Shown here in pieces: positions 4,074 through 33,436 of a stretch of 64,000 bases of DNA. The first letter of the stretch is position 1. Every line of letters begins with the position of its first letter. The translations under genes and the position numbers were made by a program. The notes under the pieces are model-generated. The model was given only the letters and a program-made list of their open reading frames with translations, ran no database searches and was not told the origin of the DNA. Source of the stretch: Ophelia neglecta (taxonomy: Eukaryota); the NCBI GenBank assembly GCA_965285935.1, contig OZ260663.1, forward strand, positions 90,210,001 to 90,274,000, written 5' to 3'.

Positions 4074-4976
4074 GGCACTGTAACAATCGGTGAAGATAAA
4101 AACATCAAGCGTTTGGCTTGTTTGTATCATGTTCTTGCAGGTCCTTTCTGTTGTATTTCAAAGGCTTTTCAGGTATAGCAAGCGGGCGGACATCTTTATT
4201 GTGTTTATTATAGGTGGTATGAATGGTGATTGAACACTTGTGTCATGTTTATTTATCATTGCAGCATGCATGAACCCGTCTAAGGACATTCAATGATCGT
4301 AACAACAAAGCAAGCTTTTCAAAGTGTTCAATGGGCATGTCGCCCTCTGCAAACCCAAAAGTGGCTCTTTTGAGAGTGTTCAGTGGTTGTTTCGACGAAA
4401 AGGAGGAGTAACTTTGTGGGCTCAGGTATTAAGAGTCTTTGATATGCTGGTATGTTCGTATCTGACCGGATACCTAAACCTTTTCTTTCAGTTCCTCCGG
4501 TTTAAATCCATTAATTAATCAATATATTGAATGTTGTAAAAAGATATTATATACAAAAATTCAAATGTGGTTTGGGCTGGGGCTCGAATCCACAACCCTT
4601 GCGGTACCATCCAACTAGCCCACCGATACCGGCGACTCTATTTGTGGGATCCAGTCCCAGACAAGTCAACAACCATATTTGAAATTCCAAAAGCCCAAAA
4701 AACTTAAAATTATCGCTCGGTTTTACACTGTAGGTTTTAAAAGGCCTATATGGCCCAGCCTGTACGGAGAAAATATATCCTGCATCGATTTCAATAAATA
4801 TATATAAAAGAAATTATAAATTTATATCAAAGTAATACCAGAAGCAACAATTACCTTGTATGTGCCTCTATCTTGGTAGTTTTCAAGTAATTATATATGG
4901 ACTTATTTTCAAGATTAAACTAAGGTAAGAGAAATAATGCACACAACAAAAAAAGCATGGATAGCCATACAAAGTA

Positions 4977-7868
4977 TTGATATATCGAACATTCATTGAT
5001 CACATCGTGTGCTCCGACCTTCTTAACCATCAGATCTCGGCTGTCTGTGTAGTTGATGATGACCATCGTAATACATCGGACCATCTTCCAGTCGGGTGCT
5101 CCCTGTCCGTGCCGACCTTACAATCATTCTCCTGTGTTAAATCCCCTCGCCTGGGATGGAGAAAGATGGCCTTCGCTGATAAGCAACAGTACATGGCTTC
5201 CCTTGACCACTGTCTGCCCTGCTCAACTACAGCGCCATGCTCACCCGAGGAAGTTAACAGTCTTTATAAGCAGGTCGTATCAGCATTACGCGTTGCCTCA
5301 GAAGAAGCCGTTCCCAAATCCAAATTCAAACCATACTTGAGGCCAAATTGGCGCTCATCGGGTTTGAAGGAACTTCAAAATAACCAGTTTCTCCTCCGTT
5401 CTGTCTGGATACGGGAGGGCAGGCCCCGCGGGATGCAGCACACTTCCTACCGCAAATACAAGCAAGCCAAGCGCCAGTTTGCAAACAATCTGGCAAAACT
5501 AGAACGAGAAGCCGATGTATCATTCTACAGTGAGGTAGACAAAGAAGCCGGTGCAAACCACCCTCGACTCTACCGTCTCCTGCGAAGGAAACGCGAGAAA
5601 AAGTTAAATCTGGCACCCCCCTTAGACATAGGAGGGGCGACACTTACTACACAGAGCGACATCATTCACGCTTGGCACGATCACCTTTCATCTTTTTATT
5701 CTCCACTGGTAGACCCAAACTTCGACGAAGCCCACAGACTCGCCGTCAGCAGCACTGTCAGTCAGCTAGAGGCCTGTGGGGCTGGGACTGACACAATTCT
5801 CGCCAACCCCATTACCACAGGGGAGATTCAGAACATCTGCGGAGAATTAAAATCTGGTTCTTGCGGTGGGCCCGACGACATAACTTACGAACACATTACG
5901 TTCGCCAGTCCCAAACTTTATTCAACGCTCGCCGCCCTATATAACTCTATGTACCAAACCTCTCATTTCCCACCTGCCATGAAACACAGCCTCATCGTAA
6001 CAATACATAAGGGCAAAAAGAAACACAAGGACGACCGTAAAAATCACCGTTGTATCAGCCTGCTTCCCGTCCTGTCTAAAGTGCTGGAAAAGATAATCAT
6101 GAGTAGGTGGTTAAAGCACAACGCCCACAACGATATCGACTTTCCATTAGATAGTCAAAACGCTTACCAGAAAAACAGGTGTTGCCTGTTGACGTCTTTT
6201 GTACTGCAAGAAACAATCGCTTATGCACGTGAGAGAGGGACCAAGGCGTACGTCTGCCTTATGGATGCCTCGACCGCCTTCGACGCCGTCTGGCACGAGG
6301 GCCTCTTCCTCAAGCTTCACCAGTTGGGTATCAGAGGCAAGCTCTGGCAGCTACTCAGATGCTCTTACCGCGACATGACTGCCAGCGTGGTGGTGAACGG
6401 CAAGCGGTCAGACCCTATTCTCATCAAACAATCATGTCGTCAAGGGTCTGTCCTTGGGGCGATGTTCTACCTGGTCTATATACACCAACTTACCGTCGAA
6501 CTACGTCAGAGCGGCAGGGGCGCTACTGTAGGAAATATTTGTACCACCTCTGTTCAACAAGCAGACGACATTGCCATTACTGCATATTCTCCGAGGGCCC
6601 TGCAAGATTTAATCTGTGTATGTCAACAATACGCGAACAAGTGGCGGTACAAATATAAGGACACCAAAACTACTGTCATGATTTTCAACGAATCAAAGCG
6701 GGAGGCCGCCAAACTGAGACATCACCGGTCATGGACACTTAATGGCTGTCCATTAAAGATATCGGATGAAGAAACACACGTAGGCATTCTCCTCAACTCT
6801 TTTCATACCTATAGCGAACGCGCCAACATCACAGTTCGAAAACTCAAGCAAGGGACCATTTCACTTTGCGGATTGGGTGTTCATCCTCGGGGACTCTCCG
6901 TCCTAACCGCCAGAAAGTTGTACATCCACATGATTATCCCAAAGGCTCTCTTTGGATGCGAACTGTGGTGCGATCGAAACCAAGGTGCAAAATCCCAAAC
7001 TGAGATAGCCCACCGGTTTTGCTTAAAAACCATACAGGATCTCCCTACACGAACCAGGTCTGTGATCGTTCACAGCATGCTCCACATTCCCACCCTGTCC
7101 TCCCGCATCGCGGAAAAACAGCTAGTCTTCATGGGCCGCATTCTCCAACTTCCACCAACCCACCTGGCTCTCAGACTATTCCGTCTACGACTCGCTCACG
7201 CTCTTTACGCTGCAACTCCTCATCATGGATCCTTGCCGGGATTTGTGGACAACTTGCACCGTCTGGGCTTGCAGGATTACCTTGACGCTTTCCCTGGGTC
7301 ATCCGTGTGGCCGAATCAGCGCGCCTGGAAAAGTCTCGTCAAAGGAGCTTCCAAAGACGAATTCGATAACTGGATGCGCGAAAATGTTAGTGCTCATGAT
7401 GAGTTCCGTCATTACGGGCTAACATGTGATGACCCTACAGCAATACATACCATCTGGCGAACGGCTCCTCTATACCCACTCCTGAGGGAACGGTTCTCCG
7501 ACCTGGCAGTACTGGCAAGTCAAACGCTGTCCGTGCCCATCCCCTGCCAGTTCTGTGACTCACCTGCGTCGGATGATCCTGACATACTAACTCACTACAT
7601 ATGTGATTGTCCAGAATTCAGAGATTTGAGGGACCTGTATTGGGATGATGTTTTTAATACTCTGATCCCTGTCATGTCAGTGCATCTTTACAATTTACCT
7701 GACAGAGAGTTAGTTAATGTAATCTTAGGGAAAAGCATTGCCATAGACAGTAGTAACCTTGACTCTAACAACGCTGGTAGGCAAGACACCAGCCTTTTAG
7801 AAATGTCTGCCAAGTACTGGAGCAGACTCAGCACATGTGTTAAAAGACAATTATGGGTCCACTTGTAG
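4977..7868 (+). CDS. Non-LTR retrotransposon ORF2, 5'-truncated (end of AP endonuclease + reverse transcriptase + C-terminal CCHC knuckle)
   Basis: 963-aa open frame. APE tail IDHI...SDHLPV; RT motifs GPDDI, NHRCISLLPVLSKVLE, DASTAFDAVWHEGL, RQGSVLG, QADD; C-terminal CQFC...HYICDC. No real start codon (begins at TTG in flank). Confidence 0.95.
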   Translation: MIYRTFIDHIVCSDLLNHQISAVCVVDDDHRNTSDHLPVGCSLSVPTLQSFSCVKSPRLGWRKMAFADKQQYMASLDHCLPCSTTAPCSPEEVNSLYKQVVSALRVASEEAVPKSKFKPYLRPNWRSSGLKELQNNQFLLRSVWIREGRPRGMQHTSYRKYKQAKRQFANNLAKLEREADVSFYSEVDKEAGANHPRLYRLLRRKREKKLNLAPPLDIGGATLTTQSDIIHAWHDHLSSFYSPLVDPNFDEAHRLAVSSTVSQLEACGAGTDTILANPITTGEIQNICGELKSGSCGGPDDITYEHITFASPKLYSTLAALYNSMYQTSHFPPAMKHSLIVTIHKGKKKHKDDRKNHRCISLLPVLSKVLEKIIMSRWLKHNAHNDIDFPLDSQNAYQKNRCCLLTSFVLQETIAYARERGTKAYVCLMDASTAFDAVWHEGLFLKLHQLGIRGKLWQLLRCSYRDMTASVVVNGKRSDPILIKQSCRQGSVLGAMFYLVYIHQLTVELRQSGRGATVGNICTTSVQQADDIAITAYSPRALQDLICVCQQYANKWRYKYKDTKTTVMIFNESKREAAKLRHHRSWTLNGCPLKISDEETHVGILLNSFHTYSERANITVRKLKQGTISLCGLGVHPRGLSVLTARKLYIHMIIPKALFGCELWCDRNQGAKSQTEIAHRFCLKTIQDLPTRTRSVIVHSMLHIPTLSSRIAEKQLVFMGRILQLPPTHLALRLFRLRLAHALYAATPHHGSLPGFVDNLHRLGLQDYLDAFPGSSVWPNQRAWKSLVKGASKDEFDNWMRENVSAHDEFRHYGLTCDDPTAIHTIWRTAPLYPLLRERFSDLAVLASQTLSVPIPCQFCDSPASDDPDILTHYICDCPEFRDLRDLYWDDVFNTLIPVMSVHLYNLPDRELVNVILGKSIAIDSSNLDSNNAGRQDTSLLEMSAKYWSRLSTCVKRQLWVHL

Positions 7869-8015
7869 ATTAGTCGCAACTTATTTCTCTTCGGGCTTTC
7901 TTTTTCTATTCCAACTGGTAACTTTATATAGCTTCTTTTTTTTCCATGTAAAATAACCACGTTCATTTGTTAATGCTCCTCTGTACCTCGAGAGGGAAAT
8001 AAAGGTAATAATAAT
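4986..8015 (+). mobile_element. Young 5'-truncated LINE (APE-RT-CCHC type; RTE-X/CR1-L2-group-like, clade not resolved)
   Basis: Abrupt switch to GC-richer sequence at ~4986. Short 3' UTR after the stop at 7868, AATAAA at 7998 and a (TAA)n tail at ~8006-8015. Possible ATATAT target duplication at 4980-4985 / 8014-8019 (low complexity, weak). Confidence 0.9.
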
Positions 8016-10641
8016 ATATAGGCACTTAAAATGACTGTAGCAATGAGTATATCATGGACAGGAGTGAGTAAAGAATTTAAACAACTTTAAAAAAACATTT
8101 ATTGAACAATGGCATAAGAGAACATTTATGGCATCATTATATCACAAGATGCATTTATATCATAACTGGCTTTTCTTTATATTGCAATATGTCTCTTTTT
8201 TTTCGTTCGTAGCATAACCAACCATACTGCTGGTTATACCAAGGATGGTCAGTTATGCAATAGCAATGGACTAATTGGTTATAGATTTCTTCATAATAAA
8301 CCATATTAGGGTACAAAAACGAATAATAGAATGACTATATGTCTAATTACTGAGCACTTTACAGGCCTTGGTCCTCTTGCCATCTGACCCTTTGTGTATG
8401 TTATAAATTCCTTCATTTAATAGTGAGACTCGAGGATAACTTAACAAGCTGGCAATGCTGTGAATTACGCTATAGTCTTTCGTAACTCATGTGTCAAACC
8501 TGTGTTGATTCTTAAAAAAAACAGTAATGACCTGTTACAACATTTAAAAGATATCGATCAATCTTAATACCAGTCTGTTGCCTCCTGAGAATTCTCTATC
8601 TTGTAAACTACACTTCCGGAGTTGGATTAACTTTTGCAACTGAAAAAAACATCTTAACATGGGCTGCCGTTTAATATATGTAAGCAAAAGAGAATGCTTT
8701 CTTTTCACACACTGAATGTCGACGTTACAACATATGGAATGCACACCAATTGACGAGTTACTTTACTTCCTCAAAGGTAACCTTTTTGTCCTGGTGGGTA
8801 GTGAGATATTTGTCTAAACTATTGGTATTGCAACTGCGCTCCTATGGATGAAGATTTGTACTTATTCACTTGATAACTGTAGTTCGGCCTTGATTTATAT
8901 TTAGTTGAACATAACTTGGAAATTCTTTTCCTCATTTAGATAATACATAGATGCTTTATTTCGTTAAATAACACATCCTTCAGTCAATGTGTATATAATG
9001 ACTGTCAGTAGTGATCTCTTACGACAGACATATTTACTTTGCCTTTTAATGGGGGGAGTCATCCGTTTAAAAACACCTTGCATTAAAAAACGAATGAAGT
9101 AGATTTCAGGAAGAGGAAAATTGCTTATAGCATATAGCCTGGGAAATGAATCTCAAATATATTTGTATACTCATAGCCTAGTTATTGAAAAAACATATAA
9201 GCCCAACGTTAACCCGGATGAAATAGATAAAAAAAGAATAAATATATAATGCCTATTGTCTTTATTATTATAATTCGACTTTATTAGAGAGGTAACCACG
9301 TAGGTATTGGCCTGTACAATAAATATTTCAAGATGAGATGCAAAAGGACCAGTGATAGATCATAACCTATTCAGTATATGATGGGTTTTTAAAATTCAAA
9401 TGTACCTTTGGTCAATAGTCGAGTCCTAATGGAAGGAGAAGGGTAGGACAAACGTTTCACATTAAGAACTGGCCACTAGATATGTTGCAATGCTCATGAA
9501 GTCAGATGTTTAAGTAAAATTCGGTATTTCTATAATAGTATTGCTTTAATGGGCTGCGCACGCCACTATACCAGATTGGTGAAAACTCTATAATATAAAA
9601 CAAATAATCAACTTCAACTACAGCCGGCAAATTTTCTCGGCTTTATCAAAATAAGTATCTCATTGTCCATGCCTCTCACCCACCAGTGCAGACGTTTTGC
9701 ACTTCCACCCCAACCCATCCCACCCCCTGCCCTCCCTTCAAGACAAAGGGCATCAGTCATCCAAAATCATTAACACAGTTAATCCAATTCATAGCATGTG
9801 TTACTAGCACCGATAGCAAATCAATTGGAGTTAATATGGACTCGGTATTCACTAACGCAGCCTGTTTGCACATCAATAGACAATCGCTCAGACAATATTT
9901 GTTCCGACTACAGATGGGACAATAATTGCATCAATTACGAAATTGTCCATGGAAGGCTGTAGAAATAATCATTGAGAAGTTTTGCTGTTGTCGGGAGGAT
10001 CTCCGGCCTAATGTGGCTCACACGCGTCAGTGCAGAAAAACATCTAGGCAATATATTCATAATTGAGACTTGTGATGTTCAGTTTGCTATGACTGACATG
10101 GATATCGAAAAGTGAATTAATGAAACATAACTACGCTATGCCGTAATATCTGATGTGTGCTCCCAAAGCGACTTTTTAGGACAAACTGCCTTTGTGTGAT
10201 GTGTCATATTGTATGTAGAGGGCTTATCGCCACATGATAGCCGAGACTGCCATAGTTATCGCTGTTTATATTGAGTCTACACCAACCTTATTTGCGGTGA
10301 GTCCTATGTTCCATTATTTTTATTTGTGAGGAACAATATTATCAGATGACCTATAACCTTTGTCGTGGTAATTTCATATAGACTGGTAGCAGTCTTTTGA
10401 ATGCCACATTGGAGGGTAACCACACCAGGCGTTTCTGGATAGCATACCTCTACATTTAGATCAGATTATAGTTGAATCACAGGAAGTGTCGCTTTAATTT
10501 CTCGGATAATTTGTTATTTTCTAGGACTTGTTAGTGACTATAGAATTGTCCCAAGTCCAAGTTTTATTTGCCTGCATCGTCAAGACATTTAGATTTGAAT
10601 CACATATACCTTTTCATTGATTTCACCAAGGATCGAACACA

Positions 10642-12597
10642 ATGTATTTGGAAGGCGGTGTCAGTAAAACTATTTCACAGTACCGGAAGTGGTTTTACCC
10701 CAGGACGTGGATTCAGATGATGTTGATAGTGTCTCTCATGTCACGCTCTGGTGGATGGATGGCAACTGATCCCCACTCACACTTTCTTGGGTGTTTCAGG
10801 GATAAGTTGCCAGCATCTGCGATGTCTATTTCTAGGTAAGAATTACTCCAATTTGAATGAAGCTTCCCCCGAAGTAAATGGACGGTGTGGGTGGTAGTTG
10901 GGTTGTGCGTGGGTGTTTGTGTATGTAATTTTGCAGTATGAAGGAATATTCATGCGCGCGGCAAAATATGCATTATTCAGACAGCGGATGGTAATAAAGT
11001 AGTCCTCGTTATCTTTATATGCGTAGTACATATTTGTACTTGTTTTGCATTAACGGGGAGGGAAGGGGGCTAGTGAGTGCGTACATTATGTAGTAATGTT
11101 AGGCTAGAAACAAACGTTTTTTGACCAAAATGTATTCAAAATTTCTGTGGTATGATACACCCATTTAGCGTATGCATAATATTATTGAATATACCGCATA
11201 CCATTAACAACAGCATTTGGATATGTAAATCAATAAGTTTTATTATTTATTGCTGCCTAAAAACAAACATTTTATACAAATTGGTATCAAATATCAGGTA
11301 CCAATTCCAACGGTATCTTCAACCTGATGAATGCAATATTATCTGTTTTTAAAACAGAACTAGTTATTGGATAGTGAGTAAGATGACCTTTCTTTTCAAT
11401 TGGCGTGTATCCAAATAACCTATGGGCTGAAGTATTATTTGTTTTGTAATAGTCATAAATGCTTCTTGATAACACAGTATGTGTATTTATGTCTATATAC
11501 GCCTACATGTTGCCTACATGTGTTCTCTCAATGAATTCGATATGAATTGTCTTTCAAAACTAATTAATAAAATATTATTTTTCAGCTTTCCTAGCCGAAT
11601 TTTCAGCATTTCTCAGTGTCTGAGTTATTGTGTGTTACAAGAGCGTACATTCGCAGGACTTCAAAACGCCGGAATCTGTCACTGCAGCGACACCTATGGA
11701 GAATATGGTATATCGGCGTCATGCGTGAAACCATGCAATGCAGATAAGCAGTATGTCTGTGGTGGGGTGTTAGCAAGCAGTATATACTCCTCCTGCCCTA
11801 AAGGATCCTTTGGCAAGAACTGTGTGTTTCAGTGTCATTGCAAAAACAACGCTATCTGTGATCTTAAAACCGGAAGATGTCCGAACGGGTGCGCATCCGG
11901 CTGGGAAGGCAAACATTGTTATTTTTCTTCCAGCATGAATTTCAGAAACATTTTTTCTGGTAATAAAAAGGTTGCGTCAAAGGAAATGGCTTTCGCCCAC
12001 TCCATGGGAATTGAAATCGGTCTAGGTCCAGACGCCACTTCCGACAAAGCCCAGGGTAGAGAGATAGATCTAGGCCGAGGGTCCACTTCCGTAAACTCAA
12101 TGAGGAAAGATATACGCAGGGGCCCAGAAGTCACACCAAGTCAGCCCGAGTCAACCGAGATCGGTGTGAAGCAATCATCGGGAACGGTAAACGGCACGAC
12201 GGTGTCACTTCAACAAAACTTGTACGAATCTGCGCGAGCATCATCTGAGACTATTGTGGAGCCTGACGTCACTCTACAGCCGTCGATAAACACAAAAAAC
12301 ACGAATGCATCAGATCCAGCAAACGAAAACATATACAATCCCGGCATGACTTTCCAGGAGTGGAAAGATAAGAACTATGACCAGTCCGTGAGACCTCGGA
12401 TTATCGGCTTTTCCGCCTTGGCCGTAAATGTGGTTGCTATTATTTGTCTGTCACTTTTTGTCTGGGAAAGACATAGCAGGCGGCCTGTCGAAAAGTCAAC
12501 GAAACAAAACGGAAAAGTGTCCAAAACAGGGGATGTTTCGGGGCCGAAAGAAATGTACGTCATTCACAGGGCCATCTCGGAAAAAGCTGAAGTCTAG
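10642..12597 (+). CDS. WSC-domain, EGF-like, single-pass membrane protein (2 coding exons: 10642-10835, 11586-12597)
   Basis: Exon 1 ends ...FLGCFRD...SIS AG|gtaag; acceptor ttcag|C at 11586 is phase-compatible (phase 2). The joined protein gives a WSC pattern (FLGCFRD...CLSYC...FAGLQNAGICHCS...CVKPC...CGG...SIY), a MEGF-type EGF (CPKGSFGKNCVFQCHC...CDLKTGRCPNGCASGWEGKHC), an S/T-rich stalk and a TM helix (IIGFSALAVNVVAIICLSLFVW). Start codon uncertain. Confidence 0.85.
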
Positions 12598-18061: not shown

Positions 18062-21000
18062 ATGATGGAAGTGTGCCACCTCTTATGCTATAACTGTTTT
18101 CTTATACTAATCTTTCCGTGGGAACTTTCAGGAAAGGAATGGGGTGTGTTCGTTGACTTGTCAGCTGCTCGTTGTGGCCTCAGGGCATTAAAAATTACAA
18201 AGCTTAGCCCCATTTTGATTATGAGCAGTATTGTAGAATGCATGGGCCAAACGACCAATGAGTGGGGAAGCATAGATATCGAAAACGACACAACTGGGAC
18301 ACAACCTTTCGGCAGTTTCCAACTCGTTTTGGCAAAAGAGGAAATGGCCAACGCCCAGAGTCAACCATATGTCTTCAAAGTCATAACACATCCTCGTCTG
18401 GGAATTAATATAACAATGGAGAGGTTTGAGATGGGTTATTCTGGAGAACCTTGTTTTTATGACCGGATGGAGCTTTACCAAAAGGCAAGTGTTAACCAGA
18501 CAAGAACCTCTTTTGGTAGGTATTGTGGAATCCGACCAGTGTGGAACATATACTCTAGTGAGCATATGATAGAATGTCACATTGTATATTCAGGTTCCTT
18601 TGGTATCGATTTACAAGCAAGCTATCAACCGTACGACTTGGCTGACATCACTGTGATTCGAGCGAGTGCTGGTATCACCAGGATAATCTCGAATGATTCG
18701 TATCCTTGCAACGAGGACGTATCTTTTCAACGAGATCCTTTAGAAAATGGAGAATATGTCATATTATGGGACAATGTTCAGACTTACAGCTGGGTGTATC
18801 AGGCCAATTATGCAAAAACTGTATCAGTAAATATGCACTTAAAAGGGAGCAGGATAGGTGATGTTCTAGCGCTATACGAGGGACCAGTTAAGGATTTGGC
18901 GATGCTTATATGGACATCAACCCATTTGGAGCCCTTTTCTGGCAGTACAATAAGTCGTCGGTCCGTCGGACCCCTTCTTACCGTGACCTTAACCACTAAC
19001 GACATGTCCACAATAACATTGTTAGTGTCAGCCTGTGACGCCGATGGTATGCTTGATAAATACAACATGTCGTTGGCCGAGGATCCAGTTACGCTCCAAA
19101 GCAGCCAGGTTTGTCTAAACAACAAACGCGTTGTGTATTGTATAATTACTTTAAATACATTGCCCGGGTTCTACCCTAGTGTACTTGTTAATGACTTGAT
19201 GTACGATGGACCAGATTTCAATTATTGCGCGATAGCTATGGTGTCCGTTTTTGACCGACAAACCGAAGAAAAGGAACTGGTGTTCCAGTTTTGTCGTTAC
19301 AATCAAGAAGTGTCTAATTGGACATTGGTAGGAAACGGACAAAACATTGTGATTCTCATACACTCATATACTCCGGTAATGAAATATTTAGACCAAAATA
19401 AGGTAAAGGGTATGTTTAATTTAAACATTACCACATCAGCCAGTCACTGCCGTGGCTTCAGGATGGAATGCAATCCCAACATTTTGCATTATGAGTGGAG
19501 ATACATAATGAACTTGCCTGCACCGTGTAATATTGTCCAGTTAAGGCCTTTACCAAATAGATTTTCGACTAAAGCTGAAAGTAGACAAGTTTGCTTCCAC
19601 AGATTAGCTTATGATTACGAGGTTGCATTATCCCGTGCTATGTACTCCATAACAGTAACCGCTTTAGGCTGGTCTCATATGTGTAAAGAAGACATTTACA
19701 TGCGAATAGAGATCAGTGATGCAGAAATACGTGGCTCTTTCTCCGATGCCATAAGATCTGGCTCTCGAATGTATACTGGAGACCTACTTAATATCCGCGT
19801 CATGAATTACTGCTTATGGTCTCGAACATGGTTTGATGTGATTGTCGAAAACTTTTGCGGCAAAAATGTGAATAAAGTCAGTTTCGATTGGCCCATCGTT
19901 GCAACAGAAATATCACCTGTGTGTTATTCGGGAAACCTACCAGCTATGAATAGAGTCTTCAGGTTCATTCCGCAAGTTGTCGACACAAAAGAACTCTCCA
20001 ATGATGTAAACACAGTACCATCTATTCTACCAGAGGACTTTGATAATATGGCTAAAGAAGAGTGTACACATCCCAACGGCACATATTGTATGCTGGTAAT
20101 GTCCTTATCGATGTCAAAGTCATGCCCTGAACATTGCGTGAAGGACCAGATGGAGATATTGGACGGACGAGGGGGGACTATGGGAAGCATGTCATATTTG
20201 CGGTTCTCAAGGGCGTTTATAAGACACTTTAGTTTCACTTTTCAACCTTCCAACTGGAAGCAGATGGCTGTGTTGGTTGATAGGGAGTTCAACGCAACTG
20301 ATGAGTGCCGTCACAGCCGATGCACAACCAAGTACTTGGTCAGCCATTCTATGCGCTCTTTGTATTTTTCGAGAGAGACAGACACCCCGGAATTTGCTTT
20401 AAGGGAAGAAACATTCATTGAGTTTAAGTATAGATCACATATATATTTTCTGTTTCCTTTAATTAATTCGACCTGGAGACAAAGCAGAGTGTTGTGCACA
20501 AATAGGCAGGCAGATTTGGTAACGATAGTAACAACCGAGGAAGAAGACGTCATAAAAATGGCATACGACTATAGAGTTCAAAATCAAAAGGGAGGTGTGA
20601 GGGAGGGCATGGCGTTTATCGGATTGAAGGGGAATAAGGTTTGTATTTAGCTGTACTAGAACGTCGAAAACTTACAACGACCTATTCACGAAATAACAAA
20701 GTCAAAACTTCTACACATGAGGAAGGCCTTTCAAAATACTATACAATATGACCGTCTTATTAAAACAAAATGTAATGAAATTATATATATGTATTGGCAA
20801 GTGATAGCTGTAGTGGGGAGGGATGGTGGTGGTTGGGCTAGGGGTTGGTGGTAGTGGTGGCGTGTGTGAGTATGTGGGTGTGTGTGTTTGTGCGCGCGGA
20901 GGGGGAGGAGGGGTTCTTGTTGTTCTTCTTCATATTATACAAAATTTCATTGTGTATTTTACATCCAAAGTCTGACCGACATCCCGGCAGATGGATCGAC

Positions 21001-22212
21001 GGACGTCCCCTAACTTTCACGCGCTGGAACACATTACCCAGGACAGGCCAACAACTGATCACCCTGAGGCACGCCGGTGGAGTCAACTTTCATGGTTTAG
21101 AATATCCCTGGTTTTCCTACGTAAAGAATATCTCACGAGAAGTACAGCCAATGGTAGATTTAGATTGCACCGCAATGGTCATCACTACTGGTTTACCAGC
21201 AGTATGGATTAGTGTTTCGTGCGATCGGACTTTCTACGATGTTAACCTTCTGTGCAAGGCCCCGTTAAATGAGTATCGGACTGGGTCGTATGTAAGTGAC
21301 ACGGAAAAAAAGCCACTGCGTGTCTCTGACGGATTCATGACATCCTGCAGAGGTTTGGCAGTGATTTCGATTAATGATATTTGTGTCGGATTGAGAAAAA
21401 CAAGCATAGCTTTTGATAACTCTACCGGAAATGAACTGCTGAATCTGACAAATAAATTCCTGAAACATTCCCTCCTTCCTCTGATCCATTCCCTTAGTCA
21501 TGCCATCAATGCTTTATTTGTTGTCAATTTTGAAGGCCAGTGCACAATAATTTACCCTGCCAGTGAAGCAAGATATGAACAAGTGCTTCACAAATGGCGT
21601 AAGCATGATTGTACCAGTCGTTTATTGAATGAATCGTCGAATGTGTATGGGTTAGTAGAGCTACGCCATAGTACCATACAGATGGAATGCCCCAATGGCT
21701 TTTTCTCATGTGACGATGGCACTTGCATCCCACAATTTCGTCTTTGTGATCAGGCCGTGGATTGCAATGGCCGCGAAGATGAGATCGGACAAATCTGTGT
21801 CGGTATGTTCAACAATTGGCCTCCTTCTCTCGAAATGAGTGACACACACCCTTGCAGGTTTCACGCGCTTGCTGCTTTCCTATGCGATAACGGTGAGTGC
21901 ATTTTGGATATCCAGAGATGTGACTATGTGGTCGACTGCGCTGATGCATCCGATGAACGTGAATGTTCTTACAGAACCCGAAGACCACTACCTGGTATGT
22001 TTCAATGTTATAATGGACAGCTTATAGACAATCACAAGAGATGCGATGCGCACAAGCATTGTTTAGATTCATCCGATGAAGACAACTGTAACCAATCACC
22101 ACCTTGTAGACATCCACACTTTGTTTGTGATGGTAAATGCCTGTCAAGAGGTAGGGTTAATGATTTGATACCCGATTGCTTAGATGGAAGTGATGAAAAT
22201 GTATACAATTGA
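18062..22212 (+). CDS. 5' part of GRL101/LGR-type GPCR: signal peptide, CUB-like domains, C-type lectin domain, 4 LDLa repeats; ends at a transposon-created TGA (exons 18062-20638, 20971-22212)
   Basis: Hydrophobic N-terminus; CUB-like motifs (GINITMERFEM...CFYD...GRYCG; CIITL...C...FCRY). Phase-0 intron AAG|gtttgt (20639) to ccaaag|TCT (20970) joins the CTLD halves (WRQSRVLC...LVTI...FIGL|...WIDG...FTRW...C...W..VSC...LLCK). LDLa repeats with DC.D.SDE. Confidence 0.88.
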
Positions 22213-22881
22213 CCATTCCTGCAATACCATACGCCGCCTGGTGGTGACCGCAGAACTACGGTTTTCGTACTTCTCGGTCGACCACTTTTCGCGAGCCACT
22301 GCGCATCCCACTGCGCATGTTATGCAGGTCACCAAGGGACATGCGAACAGCTGATCAAGATGGCTTGACAAGCTGTCCCCAGTTGTTCCACGCGAAGTAT
22401 TTCGGATCTCCAATCGCGACTCCTCGTTTATTAACCAATTGTTCTTGGTCGAAATGTCTAGAACACAGCCTAGATCGTTTGTTCACGTTTAATTTGTCAA
22501 CGATCGTGTAGTTTCCTTCGAAGGTTTGCCTTCTCTTCGTACAAGGCGCCGCCATCATGCAACCGATGCCGGGTTGTCACGGGGCCATTTAACCCAAGAT
22601 ATTTGTTCCATCCAAGGATATTTGTCCAAGTGTTTCATCTTCCTGCTATGCGAGAAGCATTCTGTTGCCTCGAAGATAAACACCATCGTCCCTTCTTTCG
22701 TTTTAAAGCTCAAAATAACGGTTGTACGACGCAGACCTCAGCATAACATGAAAAACGCCATGCATTGTTTATGACAGCTTGGGTCCGCCGACTGGAGTGG
22801 TCGACTTTTTTCCCACAATGCATTGCGCGATCGTAGTTCTGCGGTTTCCACCAGGCGGCGTATGGTATTGCAGGTATGGTC
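22211..22881 (-). mobile_element. Non-autonomous TIR DNA transposon carrying a decayed THAP-domain ORF (ISL2EU/PIF-Harbinger-group-like), inserted in GPCR exon 2
   Basis: ~50-bp imperfect TIRs (gaccattcctgcaataccatacgccgcctggtgg..accgcagaactacg and its reverse complement at ~22832-22881), flanked by AATT on both sides (equivalently an AT TSD around TGACC...GGTCA). Minus strand from 22686 reads MVFIFEATEC...KWPRD...*WRRLVRR, then after a frameshift RLCSRHF...DPKYF, a THAP signature. Confidence 0.9.
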
Positions 22882-24891
22882 AATTCGATTCTAATCACTG
22901 GAGATGAGTCAACTGAATGCAACAAAGCAACCCACTTGCCATGCTTGAAGGGGCATCCTCTGTGTTACCCCATGGAGAAAACATGTATGTTAGAGTTTGA
23001 TCTTGATAAGCAACTACTTTACTGCAGGAATGCTGCTCATCTTCAGAATTGTAGCATGTGGCAGTGTGCAAACAGCTACAAGTGTCCAATGTCATTCTGT
23101 ATCCCTTATAGATACGTATGTAACGGAGTGGCAGACTGTGTTAACGGTGAGGATGAATCGCAGTGCGAGGTCGGCGTAACATGTCCGGGTATGTTGCGGT
23201 GTAGCGGGATTTGTATCGAACCGGCGGAAATCTGTGACGGAGAAGTGCACTGCCCTAACGGTGATGACGAGAGAGTTTGTATATCCGAATGTCCTGACAA
23301 CTGTCAATGTGTTGGATTATCAGTTGCATGCTTATCCAATATGTTAACCCGTATTCCACACGTTAATTATATGTTAAGTAGCTTGGTTCTCAGTCAAAAC
23401 ACTCTATCATCCATAGATCTGCCCCCAACAGAAAACTATGGAAAATTACGTTCTTTGTTTCTGATCAACAACAAAATTTCCGATTTGGCCGCAGGCGCAA
23501 ATAATGTATTAAATAATTTGCCAAGTTTAAAGGTTTTGGATTTGTCAGGCAATCAGTTACAACATGTCGATTCGTTGAGCTTTCCTTTCAGAAGTAACAC
23601 AGTACATTACCTTTCCCTGGCATCAAACCATATATCATCATTGATGAATCATGCATTTATGGGATTTACGCACCTAGCCTCTTTAAACATTTCAAACCAG
23701 ATGCTTTATGATATATCTGACGATGCATTTTTTGGCGTTGTAAACTTGCACACGCTTGATTTACACAACAATCGCCTTTTCCAATTGAAAGTGACATGGT
23801 TTAAAGCGATGCCGAAATTGTCTTTTCTATATCTTAAAGGAAATCAAATATTTATGGTAGAGCCTAATGTTTTCCAGTCTTTGAGGGCAGACGTACATGT
23901 CGAGTTCAGTGATCCAGACTTATGTTGCTTGGCCAATTTGATAAACTGCTGGCCGAAGCGCCAAATCTTTAATGAATGCACCCGATCAATACTTTCTCTT
24001 CATACAACAATTTCTACTTGGCTTTTTGTGGTGATTTGTATTACTGGTAATGTAACAGTCATTTATTATCTGCAGCGAGGTAGTACGAGGCTAAATGGTC
24101 ATTCGTTACTTGTCGTTAATCTGGCAGTGTCTGATTTGGCATACGCAGTTTATTTAATCATTATTGCTGCAGCAGACATACACGACCCTCATGCATTTTA
24201 CGACAAACTCTGGAAGAAAAGCATTATGTGCAAGGCTGCTGCGTTCCTGGCTACCCTGTCTCACTTAATGTCGACTCTTTTGAGAATTCTCATAGCTTTT
24301 GATCGCCGTGTTGGTATACTGACTCCACTTAAGACACTCAAAAGTTCAAGAGACAAAAAGAAAGTTGTCTTGCTCTCTTGGCTTGCCAGCATTTGTATTT
24401 GTTTGATTCCGTTTAATCCGTTTGGCTTTGCCTGGAAGTCTCTGGCGCACTCAGCCTGTGTTACCTTCACCTTGACAGCTGATGACACATTCCAATTTGT
24501 ATTTTCTACCATTCTATATGTTTTTCTCACTTGCTGTGTGAGCTTGGCATTGTCAGTCATATACATTACTTTATATTTGGTCCTTATGAAAAGAAATACG
24601 AAATCCCAGCATTCTGGGAACAGCGTCGGCAATACAAAGAGGTATGCCATGAATTTCTCTTTAATCATTCTTTTAGGACTACTCTCCTGGATTCCAGCTG
24701 GAATAGGTTTATTGCTTTCATTGTCTGGAGTCCAATTACCTCGAGAACTCGTCCTTTGGATTTCAATATACATTTTACCAATGAACGCCGTTCTAGATCC
24801 GTACATCCTGACAATCTGCACTAAAAGTTTCCTAGGAAAGTTGTCTGGCCCAAACCTGACTAAAATTACCAGCACTAGCGGCCTTGAGTGA
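22876..24891 (+). CDS. 3' part of GRL101/LGR-type GPCR: LDLa repeats, LRRNT + LRRs, rhodopsin-class 7TM
   Basis: 671-aa ORF: atypical Cys module (CLKGHPLCYP...CRNAAHLQNC), 2 LDLa, CPDNCQC LRRNT, LxxLxLxxN repeats, hinge LCC...C...C, 7TM (GN; NLAVSD; W..S..CKAAAFL; FDR; C; WIP; ILPMNAVLDP). Same reading frame as the ORF upstream of the insertion; its ATG lies within the transposon TIR. Confidence 0.92.
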   Translation: MVNSILITGDESTECNKATHLPCLKGHPLCYPMEKTCMLEFDLDKQLLYCRNAAHLQNCSMWQCANSYKCPMSFCIPYRYVCNGVADCVNGEDESQCEVGVTCPGMLRCSGICIEPAEICDGEVHCPNGDDERVCISECPDNCQCVGLSVACLSNMLTRIPHVNYMLSSLVLSQNTLSSIDLPPTENYGKLRSLFLINNKISDLAAGANNVLNNLPSLKVLDLSGNQLQHVDSLSFPFRSNTVHYLSLASNHISSLMNHAFMGFTHLASLNISNQMLYDISDDAFFGVVNLHTLDLHNNRLFQLKVTWFKAMPKLSFLYLKGNQIFMVEPNVFQSLRADVHVEFSDPDLCCLANLINCWPKRQIFNECTRSILSLHTTISTWLFVVICITGNVTVIYYLQRGSTRLNGHSLLVVNLAVSDLAYAVYLIIIAAADIHDPHAFYDKLWKKSIMCKAAAFLATLSHLMSTLLRILIAFDRRVGILTPLKTLKSSRDKKKVVLLSWLASICICLIPFNPFGFAWKSLAHSACVTFTLTADDTFQFVFSTILYVFLTCCVSLALSVIYITLYLVLMKRNTKSQHSGNSVGNTKRYAMNFSLIILLGLLSWIPAGIGLLLSLSGVQLPRELVLWISIYILPMNAVLDPYILTICTKSFLGKLSGPNLTKITSTSGLE

Positions 24892-30330: not shown

Positions 30331-32510
30331 GGTATGGGACTGCGAAATCTAAAGATAAAAAAAGTCTTATAAAATGTTCGTTAAACCAACGAAGAGTAAA
30401 CAAATTTACGTAGTTTATAACCTGATCAATGTCAACTTGTTTTCAGGAAATAAGGGGATGGATACCTGGCAGATAAAGGGATATCTTTAATAAAGAATAG
30501 ACAAGTCTATTAAATCGATCTGACTATATATGTAAGAGTTAAAGAAACTCTTGTTTGCGAGAAAAGCCGAATCTGTCCAAGTAGTGAAAAGAAATTACAT
30601 GTACACGCGTTAAATAGTCTCTGTGTGTACATTTTTCATTAAATAAGATACCAAAAAAAATCTATAACTGAATACTTGTAAGAAATGTAAGAATGGGCAA
30701 AATATTGCGTCATTGTGTTGACACAACCTAAATTCCGAGAGATAAGCCCACTTAAAGCATGGACGTTTACTTAACTCACCTAGATACTTTGCTTTCAAAT
30801 AAGCTGTAGTACAATTTCAAAACTGGTCACAGATATGTGCGAACTGCAGCTGGAAATGCAGTATCCGCCTCGGGTTCAACACGTAAACAGAGGTAAATCC
30901 GGACGTACGAATGGGATATCAAACAGCAGATTCTATGCGTGGGCCATCGGTTGACATGCATACATGAGACGAATGATATATCATTCAATTAAAATAGACA
31001 TATTGCTTTATGTGACTTTACTGGCAAAGCACTATTAATATTTATTGTGATACGGAAGTATGAATATGTATGACGACAATTCCGTATCGGGCCATAGGCA
31101 GTTATGAATCCGACGTCACAGGCATTGTTGCCAAGATAAGCAGTGTAATCCACAAATATTGCACTTTAAAATAAATATTTACCCTTAAATCACCGACTCA
31201 TATCTTTACGGCTGTGTGATAATTATAAATACGTTGTACATCTTCGAGGGGTTTCCAGTTTGCCCCTATTATCGCCCAGTGAAAATATACAATATTCAAA
31301 CGTAATGTCGGTCGGCAAGTCATCATCTTGTACAGCCAATGCTTTTCTCGATATTTTCATGACATATACCTACGGATTCGTCGTCTGGCCAATGAATAGA
31401 AGCAATTGCGAAGCTAACAAAATAGCTTTATTTTATCTCATCACTGATCATTAAATGCGATGCCATTTACGTGTGTCCAGCAAATTAAGTTGTATTAAGT
31501 TAATACATAGGAAAACGAATGCTAGCGACCATGAATGGAATTACTAATACCTAGTTGGCAATTTCTGCCAAACCTTATATTTGGTACGCCCATGATTTGA
31601 GATTGTTGATATCTGTAGACGACAGTCAGTGCTCGGTGAAGGTTATTGTACTGATAGAATCCCATAAGGTATTCAGCTAATTGCACATTAATATACTTTC
31701 AAAGTACCTTTGATGAAATATATATCTCATATTCAACGTATGTTGGTAACCTTAAACGCTTATCAACCAAACCAGACATTTAGTTGTTCATTTTTCATGT
31801 GGGTATATTTCATTTAAATCCAATTGGCTCTAATTTAAAATGAATCGCATATGAATGTTCTGCATAGAAAAGACGCAAGGGAAAATTTCAAGGTATTACT
31901 ACGAGCATTCAGTTTGAACTTTGAAGAACATACACTCAAATCACCATAAAAACTATGGTATGACATTTACCTGATCTGAAAAGTGTATGTATAACGAATA
32001 AAGTCATTACCATAAATGCACTATTTGAATGCTTTCACGTTGTTTTAATACAGTTATTTTATGCATTTATTACAATCGAAGGCATTTATGATAAACAAGG
32101 TCTGGGCGGTAAAGGTCAAATAAAATACTAAAGTTCAAACATTGTCCAAGATGGCAATGTGCTTCAATTTGTACTGTTAAATGCAAACTGTCAGTTTGAT
32201 TTTTAAAAATAAGCTCGATTTAGTTATGTCACATGCTCGTTGCAAACCGACCAAAAGCCCAAAACTGTGATATATCCCAATATTTAAAAAAAATGAATCA
32301 TTGGCTCAAATACAAAAGCAATTGCACTAATTTGCAAGTACATCAAGAACGGATATATTTATTTTACACCTGTCAATTACAAGGCATATTTTCTGGTGTA
32401 TTTGTTATTTAATAATATACCTGAATAAGAAAGAAATTTTCCTTTCTCAAATCTGTATAAGGCAAGCACCGGCATTGTACATGGTACCCTGTACCATAGC
32501 GAGATCTACC

Positions 32511-32956
32511 TCTACCGGACATGACCTGCTTCATGTGGCAAATAAATTCCTTCCTCTGATCCATTCCCTTAGCCATGCCATCAATACTTTATTCGTTGTC
32601 AGTTGGGAAGGACAGTACACAATAATGTTCCCTGCCAACGAAGCAAGACATGAAAAAATTCTACACAAATGGCAAAAACATGATTGAAACAGTCGTTTAT
32701 TGAAAGAGTCTTCGAACTTGTATCAGGAAGTAGAGCCACAATATAGTGATATTGCCGTGCGACGATTGCCCACAGTTTCGTGTTTGAGACCAGGCCGTGC
32801 ATTGCAATTGCCGCGGAGACGAATCTGTGTTCAACAATTGACCCTCTTCTCTCATAATAAGTGGCAAACACTCTTGAAGGTTTCACAATTTTGTTGTTTT
32901 ACGGATTGCGGCGAGAGCCTTTTAAATATTCAGGTATGTGACTATGTTGTCGACTG
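32511..32956 (+). pseudogene. Decayed fragment of a GRL101-like GPCR paralog (matches ~21421-21939)
   Basis: Translates as STGHDLLHVANKFLPLIHSLSHAINTLFVV...HKWQKHD* versus STGNELLNLTNKFLKHSLLPLIHSLSHAINALFVV...HKWRKHDC. Shows TGT>TGA, deletions and frameshifts, then LDLa remnants (CDYVVDC). Confidence 0.9.
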
Positions 32957-33436
32957 TATTGTTTCCAAAAATAATGTAAATCATCTTTAACTGAGCGAAA
33001 AGCTCACTGCAATGTCCTATATGCGCTTTATAAATGTTTGTTTGATCTTTTAAATTTATTTTTGATTGAGAAGATGGGACACCCAAACTTTCTTTAGCAC
33101 TTCAACTTCAACAAGTTCACATATTCATAAAACTGTTTTAGTCTGAAAAGAAGAATAATTTTTAGCCTTATAAAGAAAAAAATATTGGATGATTTAGATA
33201 CAAACTTGTGGTATATGTGTTCTATAAAGTATGAACTGGGGTTCAGATTCTACTTATTTTCAAAATTAAATTTGAGAGCCTCTGCAACACAGCCTGTCAA
33301 GTAAGGTAACCCCATGTGGCAAGAATAGTGTTCAGAAGTACTACATTCTAAGGTGGGTCAAAGATCCTATCCGTAGTTGGAAAACATGCAATTAATGTGG
33401 CAGCAAGTCTTATAAAGTCCTTGCCAGGTATCACCC

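What the first reader, a model, noticed from the sequence alone, without database searches (positions are those of the whole stretch)
22190..22890. THAP transposon splits a giant receptor in frame: it creates a stop on entry, donates an ATG on exit, and is precisely reversible
Seen in sequence: the element plus one target copy is 675 bp (225 codons), so the ORFs on both sides share one frame. The left junction reads AAT TGA (stop made by the insertion); the right TIR reads ATG GTC AAT TCG, in frame with LDLa-LRR-7TM. Removing it restores ...CLDGSDENVYN-SILITGDESTEC... with no other lesion in ~5.8 kb of coding sequence, although the element's own THAP ORF is decayed. Inference, one of: (a) a recent null or polymorphic allele; (b) gene fission into a secreted ~1272-aa CUB/CTL/LDLa decoy plus a 671-aa receptor started from the TE; (c) an on/off switch through precise somatic excision (PIF/Harbinger-group elements often excise cleanly); (d) removal by splicing, since in-frame GT-AG pairs exist (GT 22201 with AG 22853-22854, or GT 22190 with AG 22872-22873), though both donors are weak.
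Basis: partly seen in the sequence, partly recalled or inferred. Interest (0 to 1): 0.8.

Follow-up and report, generated by a model that had tools for sequence, protein, structure and literature searches.

The report
Young transposon insertion splitting a receptor gene
A 671-base mobile element from a young family of about 250 copies has landed in the coding exon of a large receptor gene, and DNA reads from the one public sample also carry the intact, uninterrupted version, so this is most likely an ordinary recent knock-out allele that is still polymorphic.

Summary
A 671-bp element (22211-22881) has 50-nt terminal inverted repeats and AATT on both sides. It sits in exon 2 of a 1940-aa CUB / C-type-lectin / LDLa / LRR / 7TM receptor gene. 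It creates AAT-TGA on entry and ATG-GTC-AAT on exit. Element plus one AATT is 675 bp.

It belongs to a young non-autonomous family of about 250 copies, many about 99% identical, and all 40 copies examined are flanked by AATT. Older copies keep an intact THAP-only ORF. The AATT target plus THAP fits ISL2EU-type elements best, which are sister to PIF/Harbinger. No autonomous partner was found.

Decisive result: in all three public DNA runs (one sample), a contig joins 22205 directly to 22881 and skips exactly 675 bp. The empty site therefore exists as DNA. The region carries two haplotypes at equal depth.

A paralogue 2.2 Mb away is uninterrupted and colinear across the site. Haplotype SNPs give pN/pS of about 0.3, so the gene is under constraint.

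Fission, an excision switch and splicing have no support; no RNA data were available. The in-frame length is a coincidence, because it depends on a 1-bp deletion nearly private to this copy. The scan's first readers had already noted this TE family elsewhere in this genome.

The parts
18062..20638 (+). Receptor exon 1 (859 aa): signal peptide, CUB-like region, start of the C-type-lectin-like module
   Evidence: The ORF is open. Pfam finds CUB at E=1.5e-5. The N-terminus is hydrophobic, KD 2.47.
20639..20970 (+). The single intron, GT..AG, phase 0 (332 nt)
   Evidence: The sequence reads aag|gtttgt ... ccaaag|tct, and the frame continues GLKGNK|SDRHPGRW. DNA contigs run unbroken through it.
20971..22209 (+). 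Exon 2, part upstream of the insertion (413 aa): rest of the lectin-like module and 4 LDLa repeats. Ends ...DGSDENVYN.
   Evidence: Translation. Pfam finds Ldl_recept_a four times, E=1.9e-25. It aligns to paralogue residues up to 440.
22207..22210 (.). Left copy of the AATT target. AAT plus the element's first bases makes the stop TGA at 22210-22212.
   Evidence: AATT flanks 40 of 40 copies.
22211..22881 (.). Non-autonomous DNA transposon, 671 bp, member of a family of about 250 copies
   Evidence: At least 40 full-length copies at about 99% identity. The TIR 27-mer has 255+252 hits. This copy has 4 differences from the family majority. Read depth is 4,000-28,000 against 11-36 in the flanks.
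22211..22260 (+). Left terminal inverted repeat
   Evidence: pair I1
22832..22881 (-). Right terminal inverted repeat. It contains the in-frame ATG at 22876-22878 and two acceptor-like CAG|G sites (AG at 22853-22854 and 22872-22873).
22355..22713 (-). Decayed THAP zinc-finger ORF of the element. It carries a stop, a Cys-to-Phe change at the first zinc ligand, and a 1-bp deletion after 22511.
   Evidence: Pfam THAP scores E=0.0065 here. The intact 119-aa version in older copy L032:208-564 scores 26.2 bits, above the cut-off. The copies are compared.
22882..22885 (.). Right copy of the AATT target
22885..24891 (+). Exon 2, part downstream of the insertion (668 aa plus stop): LDLa, LRR ectodomain, rhodopsin-type 7TM
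   Evidence: Translation. Pfam finds LRR_8 at 7e-23, 7tm_1 at 9.3e-19 and Ldl_recept_a at 3.9e-8. It is 55% identical to the paralogue from residue 442.

Best explanation
A copy of a young, non-autonomous cut-and-paste DNA transposon inserted recently into an AATT site in exon 2 of a functional receptor gene. The element has 50-nt TIRs, an AATT target, and carries only a decayed THAP DNA-binding ORF; it is ISL2EU-like. The gene encodes a 1940-aa CUB / lectin / LDLa / LRR / 7TM receptor.

The insertion stops translation after residue 1272, so the filled allele cannot make the receptor. At best it makes a truncated, secreted ectodomain fragment.

The insertion is not fixed. The exact pre-insertion allele is present as DNA in the only public sample, most likely as the second haplotype of the sequenced individual. 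So this is a segregating loss-of-function allele produced by ongoing or very recent activity of the TE family.

The in-frame length and the ATG in the right TIR are by-products of the TIR sequence and of a 1-bp deletion in this copy.

Shown: the anatomy, the family, the empty allele, the intact paralogue, and constraint on the gene. Inferred: heterozygosity of the assembled individual, that the empty allele is ancestral, and the ISL2EU assignment.
For: (1) Empty site as DNA. In X1, X2 and X3, contigs of 2705, 2712 and 2785 nt at single-copy depth join 22205 to 22881, skipping 675 nt. 35 letters lie on the left side and the right side starts at record position 36, so nothing lies between (tables 5 and 8). 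These are DNA runs, because contigs run unbroken through the intron.

(2) Two haplotypes at equal depth next to the site. Bubble contigs at 21930-22039 have depths 21/21.6 (X1) and 20.4/23 (X3). One arm is identical to the assembly. The upstream contig ends at 22200 in all three runs, so the graph branches there.

(3) The family is young and abundant. At least 40 copies are about 99% identical. There are about 250 TIR pairs. This copy has only 3 substitutions and 1 deletion against the family majority.

(4) All 40 copies are flanked by AATT, and the empty allele keeps one AATT.

(5) The host gene is otherwise intact. The paralogue in L050 has one uninterrupted 1116-aa exon 2, colinear across the site...YN at residue 440, one residue, then alignment resumes at 442.

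(6) Coding SNPs between contigs of the sample are 10 synonymous and 11 non-synonymous, pN/pS about 0.31. The locus has been evolving as a working gene.

(7) ISL2EU elements are described with a target A|AT|T and a THAP-bearing transposase (PMC4482050, PMC4122938).
Against: The filled junction was not among the contig pieces listed for the sample (911 pieces were not shown). Heterozygosity of that individual is therefore inferred, not seen. The sample could instead be a different, homozygous-empty animal; the insertion would still be polymorphic.

Contig depth is a mean over the whole contig, so the allele fraction of the empty junction is unknown.

The upstream contig ends at 22200, not at 22210 as a pure insertion heterozygote predicts. 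This is unexplained; a linked SNP near 22201 would fit.

All three runs come from one sample and one study. No RNA data exist to show that the filled allele is non-functional. No autonomous partner was found, so the superfamily assignment rests on the target site and THAP only.
Confidence: 0.8

Rival explanations
1. On/off switch by precise excision. The germline is filled, and the empty junction in the reads comes from somatic or germline excision of the element, which restores the receptor ORF in some cells.
For: The empty junction is exact. The family looks recently mobile. The related PIF/Harbinger MITE mPing excises precisely (PMC2836001, PMC4561436).
Against: The empty junction was assembled into the main contig path in three separate runs, including one with only about 11x depth. 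That requires a large allele fraction, not rare excision. The flanking region shows two haplotypes at 1:1 depth, as expected for ordinary heterozygosity. Precise excision has not been shown for ISL2EU-type elements. No autonomous transposase source was found.
Confidence: 0.05
2. Gene fission in progress. The filled allele is functional as two products: a secreted 1272-aa CUB/lectin/LDLa protein, and a 671-aa LDLa-LRR-7TM receptor translated from the ATG in the right TIR.
For: Both ORFs are intact. The ATG at 22876 is in frame. The upstream product has a signal peptide. There is no intron downstream of the stop, so exon-junction-dependent mRNA decay is not expected (the decay inference is from general knowledge).
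Against: The intact ORFs are explained by the insertion's youth: 4 differences from the family majority. The in-frame length depends on a nearly private 1-bp deletion. The downstream product has no signal peptide (max hydropathy 0.59 against 2.47 for the native N-terminus), although it must export a Cys-rich ectodomain of about 380 aa. The uninterrupted allele still segregates. There is no evidence of a promoter in the element and there are no RNA data.
Confidence: 0.04
3. The element is removed from the mRNA as an intron, using a cryptic donor in the exon (GT at 22190 or 22201) and an acceptor in the right TIR (AG at 22853-22854 or 22872-22873). The filled allele would then still make a near-normal receptor.
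For: Both pairs exist and are in frame, removing 654 or 684 nt. The two TIR sites read ...ccaccag|g and ...ttgcag|g, which resemble consensus acceptors (read; the consensus is from general knowledge).
Against: Both donors are weak: GTGATG and GTATAC contexts. There is no RNA run to test it. The joint seen in the reads is the 675-nt TIR-to-TIR deletion in DNA runs, not either predicted splice junction.
Confidence: 0.05

Closest known systems
ISL2EU group of the PHIS superfamily (PIF/Harbinger-ISL2EU-Spy), non-autonomous derivative
   Same: The target site is AATT. It is described as A|AT|T with a 2-bp AT duplication and a conserved flanking A and T. The transposase carries an N-terminal THAP domain. 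TIRs of 6-259 bp are reported (PMC4482050, PMC4122938). Here AATT flanks 40 of 40 copies and a THAP ORF sits next to one end.
   Different: The TIRs do not start with the usual GG. No DDE transposase or YqaJ ORF with these TIRs was found. Because AATT is a palindrome, a 2-bp AT duplication cannot be told apart from a 4-bp AATT duplication.
Kolobok superfamily
   Same: Four-base palindromic target. Termini are 5'-RR...YY-3', here GA...TC (PMC9587614). THAP-bearing transposases are reported for Kolobok (my recollection of Repbase descriptions, not checked here).
   Different: Kolobok duplicates TTAA. This family uses AATT in 40 of 40 copies.
mPing / Tourist MITE insertion polymorphisms (PIF/Harbinger)
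   Same: A short, high-copy, nearly identical non-autonomous family mobilised in trans. Insertions are polymorphic within a species. Exact empty sites are found (PMC2836001, PMC4561436, PMC3689806).
   Different: mPing duplicates TTA/TAA and carries no ORF. This element uses AATT, is 671 bp and carries a THAP-only ORF relic.
P-element KP-type internally deleted elements
   Same: An internally deleted element that keeps only the THAP DNA-binding part of the transposase. Older copies have an intact 119-127 aa THAP ORF.
   Different: P elements make 8-bp duplications. In the young subfamily and in this copy the THAP ORF is broken.
LDLa-containing leucine-rich-repeat GPCRs (type C LGR / GRL101-like receptors)
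   Same: The host gene has LDLa repeats, an LRR ectodomain and a rhodopsin-type 7TM.
   Different: It has an extra N-terminal region of about 1000 aa with CUB-like and lectin-like modules. The best database relatives of the C-terminal half are only about 30% identical.

Membership tests
Non-autonomous cut-and-paste DNA transposon (MITE-like) | Terminal inverted repeats, a flanking target duplication, many near-identical copies, no transposase gene | tested here: met
   50-nt TIRs. AATT on both sides in 40 of 40 copies. About 250 copies, at least 40 of them about 99% identical. The only ORF is a THAP ORF of 127 aa or less.
ISL2EU (PHIS superfamily) | Insertion into AATT (A|AT|T), leaving AAT...ATT around the element and a single AATT at empty sites | tested here: met
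   Flanks. The empty allele in the reads keeps one CAATT: a 675-nt skip with 5 shared letters. A 4-bp AATT duplication explains the same data.
ISL2EU (PHIS superfamily) | THAP domain at the N-terminus of the transposase | tested here: met
   The THAP ORF lies adjacent to one end. Pfam PF05485 scores 26.2 bits against a cut-off of 23.9 in older copy L032:208-564. Only the domain is present, not a transposase.
ISL2EU (PHIS superfamily) | Autonomous copy with a PHIS-type DDE transposase and a second ORF with a YqaJ exonuclease domain | tested here: inconclusive
   All 14 unpaired TIR hits on contig C1 were old or truncated short copies. None of the top 150 THAP-peptide hits has an open frame above 212 aa. 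The genome holds at least 150 YqaJ matches, but none on C1 lies near a TIR hit.
ISL2EU (PHIS superfamily) | TIRs usually begin with GG | tested here: not met
   The termini read GACC... (or TGACC... under the 2-bp model). The paper calls this feature 'usual', not defining (PMC4482050).
PIF/Harbinger proper | 3-bp TWA target duplication | tested here: not met
   AATT flanks in 40 of 40 copies, with no TTA/TAA duplication.
Kolobok | TTAA-specific 4-bp duplication | tested here: not met
   AATT, never TTAA. The RR...YY termini are met (GA...TC).
P element | 7-8 bp target duplication | tested here: not met
   No duplication beyond AATT in the 30 copies listed with their flanks.
LDLa-LRR GPCR (type C LGR / GRL101-like) | LDLa repeats plus an LRR ectodomain plus a rhodopsin-family 7TM in one polypeptide | tested here: met
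   Pfam hits. The paralogue shows the same architecture without interruption.

The most novel reading that the evidence does not exclude
The filled allele is not a simple null. It is kept in the population because it yields a secreted 1272-aa CUB/lectin/LDLa ectodomain (a decoy), with or without a TE-initiated receptor. Alternatively, frequent exact excision of this ISL2EU-like element toggles the receptor between off and on. Either would be a natural example of a transposon acting as a reversible in-frame gene splitter.
Probability: 0.05. Interest if true: 0.7.

Novelty: new member of a known kind. Interest (0 to 1): 0.22.

Why it matters
As it stands, this is a textbook case of a recently active DNA transposon creating a segregating loss-of-function allele in a coding exon, so it has little general importance.

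It has some local value in three respects:
- It shows that this THAP/AATT family has been mobile within the coalescent time of the present population.
- It provides a clean filled/empty allele pair that fixes the family's target site, with one AATT at the empty site.
- It gives a natural knock-out allele of a very unusual 1940-aa receptor, which could be used to study that receptor's function.

Tried and rejected
(1) Autonomous partner.
- I fetched all 14 unpaired TIR hits on contig C1. All were old (94-97%) or truncated short copies.
- A THAP-peptide search of the genome gave only short open frames, 212 aa or less, among the 150 hits scored out of 541 candidates.
- A YqaJ family search gave 150 hits, but none on C1 was near a TIR hit.
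- An 8.4-kb 'P-like transposase with nested YqaJ' element noted by other agents at C5:72.63 Mb is an untested lead for the partner.

(2) RNA evidence. The run search returned three runs of unrecorded type from one sample, which behave as DNA. Expression, TE-initiated transcripts and splicing could not be tested.

(3) Exact-product look-up of the 671-aa ORF in public assemblies: nothing on record.

(4) A haplotig with the empty site in the assembly: none. Only 68-73% identical paralogous matches were found.

(5) dN/dS of each half against the paralogue: rejected as uninformative at 48-55% amino-acid identity, where synonymous sites are saturated. I used within-sample SNPs instead.

(6) Zygosity from contig depth: not possible, because depth is a mean per contig.

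(7) The joined empty-site ORF was not built or searched. The two halves were always handled separately, except for one in-script count of synonymous and non-synonymous sites, from which no joined sequence was printed, saved or sent to any search.
Full report
**1. What is there**

Element anatomy:
- The window carries an inverted repeat with arms at 22207-22260 and 22832-22885 (54 nt, 94% complementary).
- The element proper runs from 22211 (GACCATT...) to 22881 (...ATGGTC), 671 bp.
- AATT lies on both sides, at 22207-22210 and 22882-22885.
- Element plus one AATT is 675 bp, or 225 codons.

Host gene on the + strand:
- Exon 1 is 18062-20638 (859 aa). It opens with a hydrophobic signal-like N-terminus and holds a CUB match.
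- A single GT..AG phase-0 intron spans 20639-20970.
- Exon 2 is split by the element into 20971-22209 (413 aa, four LDLa repeats) and 22885-24888 (668 aa: LDLa, LRRs, rhodopsin-type 7TM).
- There is no other stop or frameshift.
- The upstream reading frame ends ...DENVYN with AAT TGA. The TGA is made by the last T of the target and the first two bases of the element.
- In the right TIR, ATG GTC AAT TCG is in frame with the downstream part.

**2. Is the configuration more than chance?**

No.
- The TIR sequence guarantees a TGA for any copy that enters in this codon phase.
- It guarantees an in-frame ATG if the inserted length is a multiple of three.
- Most copies are 672 bp, which makes 676 with the target copy and is out of frame.
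- This copy is 671 bp because of a 1-bp deletion after 22511. Only one of the 39 other copies compared shares it. The reads, which are dominated by the other copies, confirm it by showing a T put in behind 22511 (table 4).
- The tidy 'stop in, ATG out, same frame' picture is therefore about a one-in-nine coincidence.

**3. The element belongs to a young, abundant family**

Copy number and age:
- A whole-genome DNA search gave at least 40 full-length copies at about 99% identity, out of 335 candidates.
- A 27-nt TIR pattern has 255 forward and 252 reverse hits, which means about 250 copies.
- A THAP-peptide search found 541 candidates.
- Read depth over the element is 4,000-28,000, against 11-36 in the flanks.
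- Older copies at 94-97% identity also exist.
- The window copy differs from the family majority at only four places: 22334, 22446, 22665 and the 1-bp deletion.

Target site:
- All 40 copies examined have AATT on both sides, with no further duplication.
- There is a preference for C/T before the AATT and G/A after it.

THAP ORF:
- Older copies carry an intact 119-127 aa ORF on the minus strand that is a THAP zinc finger (C-x4-C ... C-x2-H). Pfam PF05485 scores 26.2 bits, above the cut-off.
- The young subfamily has lost the first Cys and gained a stop.
- The young, broken copies must have been moved in trans.

**4. Which kind of transposon**

The literature describes ISL2EU elements, which are sister to PIF/Harbinger and Spy in the PHIS superfamily, as follows:
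- they insert into A|AT|T with a 2-bp AT duplication and a conserved flanking A and T;
- their transposase carries an N-terminal THAP domain;
- they have a second ORF with a YqaJ exonuclease domain (PMC4482050; PMC4122938).

AATT flanks plus a terminal THAP relic fit this description best. Other families fit less well:
- PIF/Harbinger proper duplicates TWA: excluded.
- P elements make 7-8 bp duplications: excluded.
- Kolobok duplicates TTAA and has RR..YY termini (PMC9587614). The termini fit here (GA..TC) but the target does not.

Because AATT is a palindrome, a 2-bp and a 4-bp duplication give identical sequences. The usual GG start of ISL2EU TIRs is absent.

I could not find the autonomous partner:
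- Unpaired TIR hits on C1 are old or truncated short copies.
- No long open frame appears among the top THAP hits.

The assignment is therefore 'ISL2EU-like, unproven'.

**5. The decisive result: the empty site exists as DNA**

- The only public runs holding this stretch are three runs of one sample and one study.
- They behave as whole-genome DNA. Each has about 650 Mb of contigs, and contigs run unbroken through the intron.
- In each run one contig (2705, 2712 and 2785 nt; depth 36.5, 11.3 and 25.2, which is the single-copy depth of that run) starts with 35 letters matching 22171-22205 and continues at its 36th letter with 22881 onward.
- This joint skips exactly 675 nt, with five letters (CAATT) that fit either side (tables 5 and 8).
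- It cannot come from a paralogue. The only related sequences in the assembly are 68-73% identical.

Evidence bearing on zygosity:
- Just upstream, two 110-nt contigs differing at 21960, 21990 and 22009 have equal depth (21/21.6 in X1, 20.4/23 in X3). One of them is identical to the assembly.
- Long stretches of other contigs are also identical, or nearly so, to the assembly.
- The sample therefore carries two haplotypes here, one of them the assembled one.
- In all three runs the upstream contig stops at 22200, so the assembly graph has two continuations there.

The simplest reading is that the sequenced animal is heterozygous: filled on the assembled haplotype, empty on the other. Three caveats apply:
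- The filled junction was not among the pieces listed (911 were not shown).
- Contig depth cannot give allele fractions.
- The branch lies 10 nt upstream of where a pure insertion heterozygote predicts. A linked SNP near 22201 would explain it, but I could not check, because only one reads call was allowed.

Even if the sample were a different, homozygous-empty animal, the insertion would still be polymorphic.

**6. The host gene is a working gene with an intact paralogue**

- A paralogue 2.2 Mb away (L050, minus strand) has the same two-exon structure (897 aa plus 1116 aa) and the same domains, without interruption.
- The upstream part aligns to it up to residue 440 (...DGSDE-x-x-YN). The downstream part aligns from residue 442, with 48% and 55% identity. 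The site is therefore colinear and the uninterrupted reading frame is the ancestral state.
- The 21 coding differences between contigs of the sample and the assembly split 10 synonymous to 11 non-synonymous. That gives pN/pS of about 0.31, which indicates purifying selection up to the recent past.

**7.

(a) Recent null or polymorphic allele: supported by sections 3, 5 and 6.

(b) Fission into a secreted decoy plus a TE-started receptor: no support.
- The intact halves are explained by youth.
- The frame depends on a nearly private deletion.
- The downstream product lacks a signal peptide (hydropathy maximum 0.59 against 2.47 for the native N-terminus), yet it would have to export a Cys-rich ectodomain of about 380 aa.
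- A truncated secreted 1272-aa fragment from the filled allele is plausible, because there is a signal peptide and no intron after the stop. Nothing indicates that it is selected for.

(c) Excision switch: exact excision is documented for the related mPing (PMC2836001, PMC4561436). However, assembly of the empty junction into the main path in three runs, one at only 11x, together with the 1:1 haplotypes, points to a germline allele.

(d) Splicing: the acceptor-like sites in the right TIR look reasonable, the donors are weak, and there are no RNA data. The joint seen in DNA is the TIR-to-TIR one, not a splice junction.

**8. Verdict**

This is an ordinary, recent, still-segregating transposon insertion that knocks out one allele of one member of a small receptor family.
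- Novelty: a new member of known kinds, namely an ISL2EU-like non-autonomous element and a TE insertion polymorphism in an exon.
- Other first readers of this scan had already noted the same THAP-only, AATT-flanked mini-transposon at other places in this genome. I confirmed its features independently here.
- Interest is low, about 0.2.
- The most novel reading not excluded is a maintained decoy or fission allele, or an excision toggle. I put it at about 5%.

The joined (empty-site) coding sequence was not built for, or sent to, any search tool. The halves were treated separately throughout, except that one script joined them internally, only to count synonymous and non-synonymous sites.

Noticed in passing
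L032:208-564 (+), likewise L033 and L042; genome-wide hits with 127-aa open frames: Older copies of the same mini-transposon (94-97% identical to the window copy) keep an intact stand-alone THAP zinc-finger ORF of 119-127 aa. The youngest, most amplified subfamily has lost the first zinc-ligand Cys and carries a stop. A THAP-only product could act as a KP-like repressor or competitor at the TIRs, and its loss coincides with the latest burst.
   Followed up: partly
window 22229-22268 (reads): In all three runs, a contig at single-copy depth (40.1, 11.6 and 33.7) joins 22229 to 22268, a 38-nt deletion inside the left TIR. It is probably another genomic copy with a damaged TIR, but its location is unknown.
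   Followed up: no
window 22200/22171 (reads): In all three runs the contig upstream of the insertion ends at 22200, and the empty-site contig starts at 22171 (a 30-nt overlap). The graph therefore branches 10 nt before the point expected for a pure filled/empty heterozygote. A linked variant near 22201 would explain this; it was not verified.
   Followed up: no
window 32493-32972 (+): An isolated fragment is 39% identical at protein level to residues 145-328 of the upstream part of the receptor's exon 2, and about 70% identical at DNA level. No long ORF surrounds it. It is a decayed partial duplicate of the receptor gene about 8 kb downstream.
   Followed up: partly
L050 (G000:C5:92407500-92417400), minus strand, 3057-6407 and 6858-9551: An intact paralogue of the giant receptor (897 + 1116 aa, same CUB / LDLa / LRR / 7TM architecture) lies 2.2 Mb from the window on the same chromosome. 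The receptor type therefore exists in at least two full copies.
   Followed up: partly
window 4977-7868 (+): A 963-aa ORF has a reverse-transcriptase domain (RVT_1, E=4.6e-22). It is a retrotransposon about 10 kb upstream of the receptor gene.
   Followed up: no
window 11479-12597 (+) and 54573-55457 (-): A 372-aa ORF has a WSC domain (E=2e-7), and a 293-aa ORF has a partial flavin-monooxygenase-like match (E=3.4e-11). Both are probably exons of neighbouring genes.
   Followed up: no
whole genome: At least 150 YqaJ exonuclease-domain matches, many with open frames of 300-950 aa and in groups of near-identical score. This points to several active or recently active YqaJ-carrying transposon families in this genome.
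   Followed up: no
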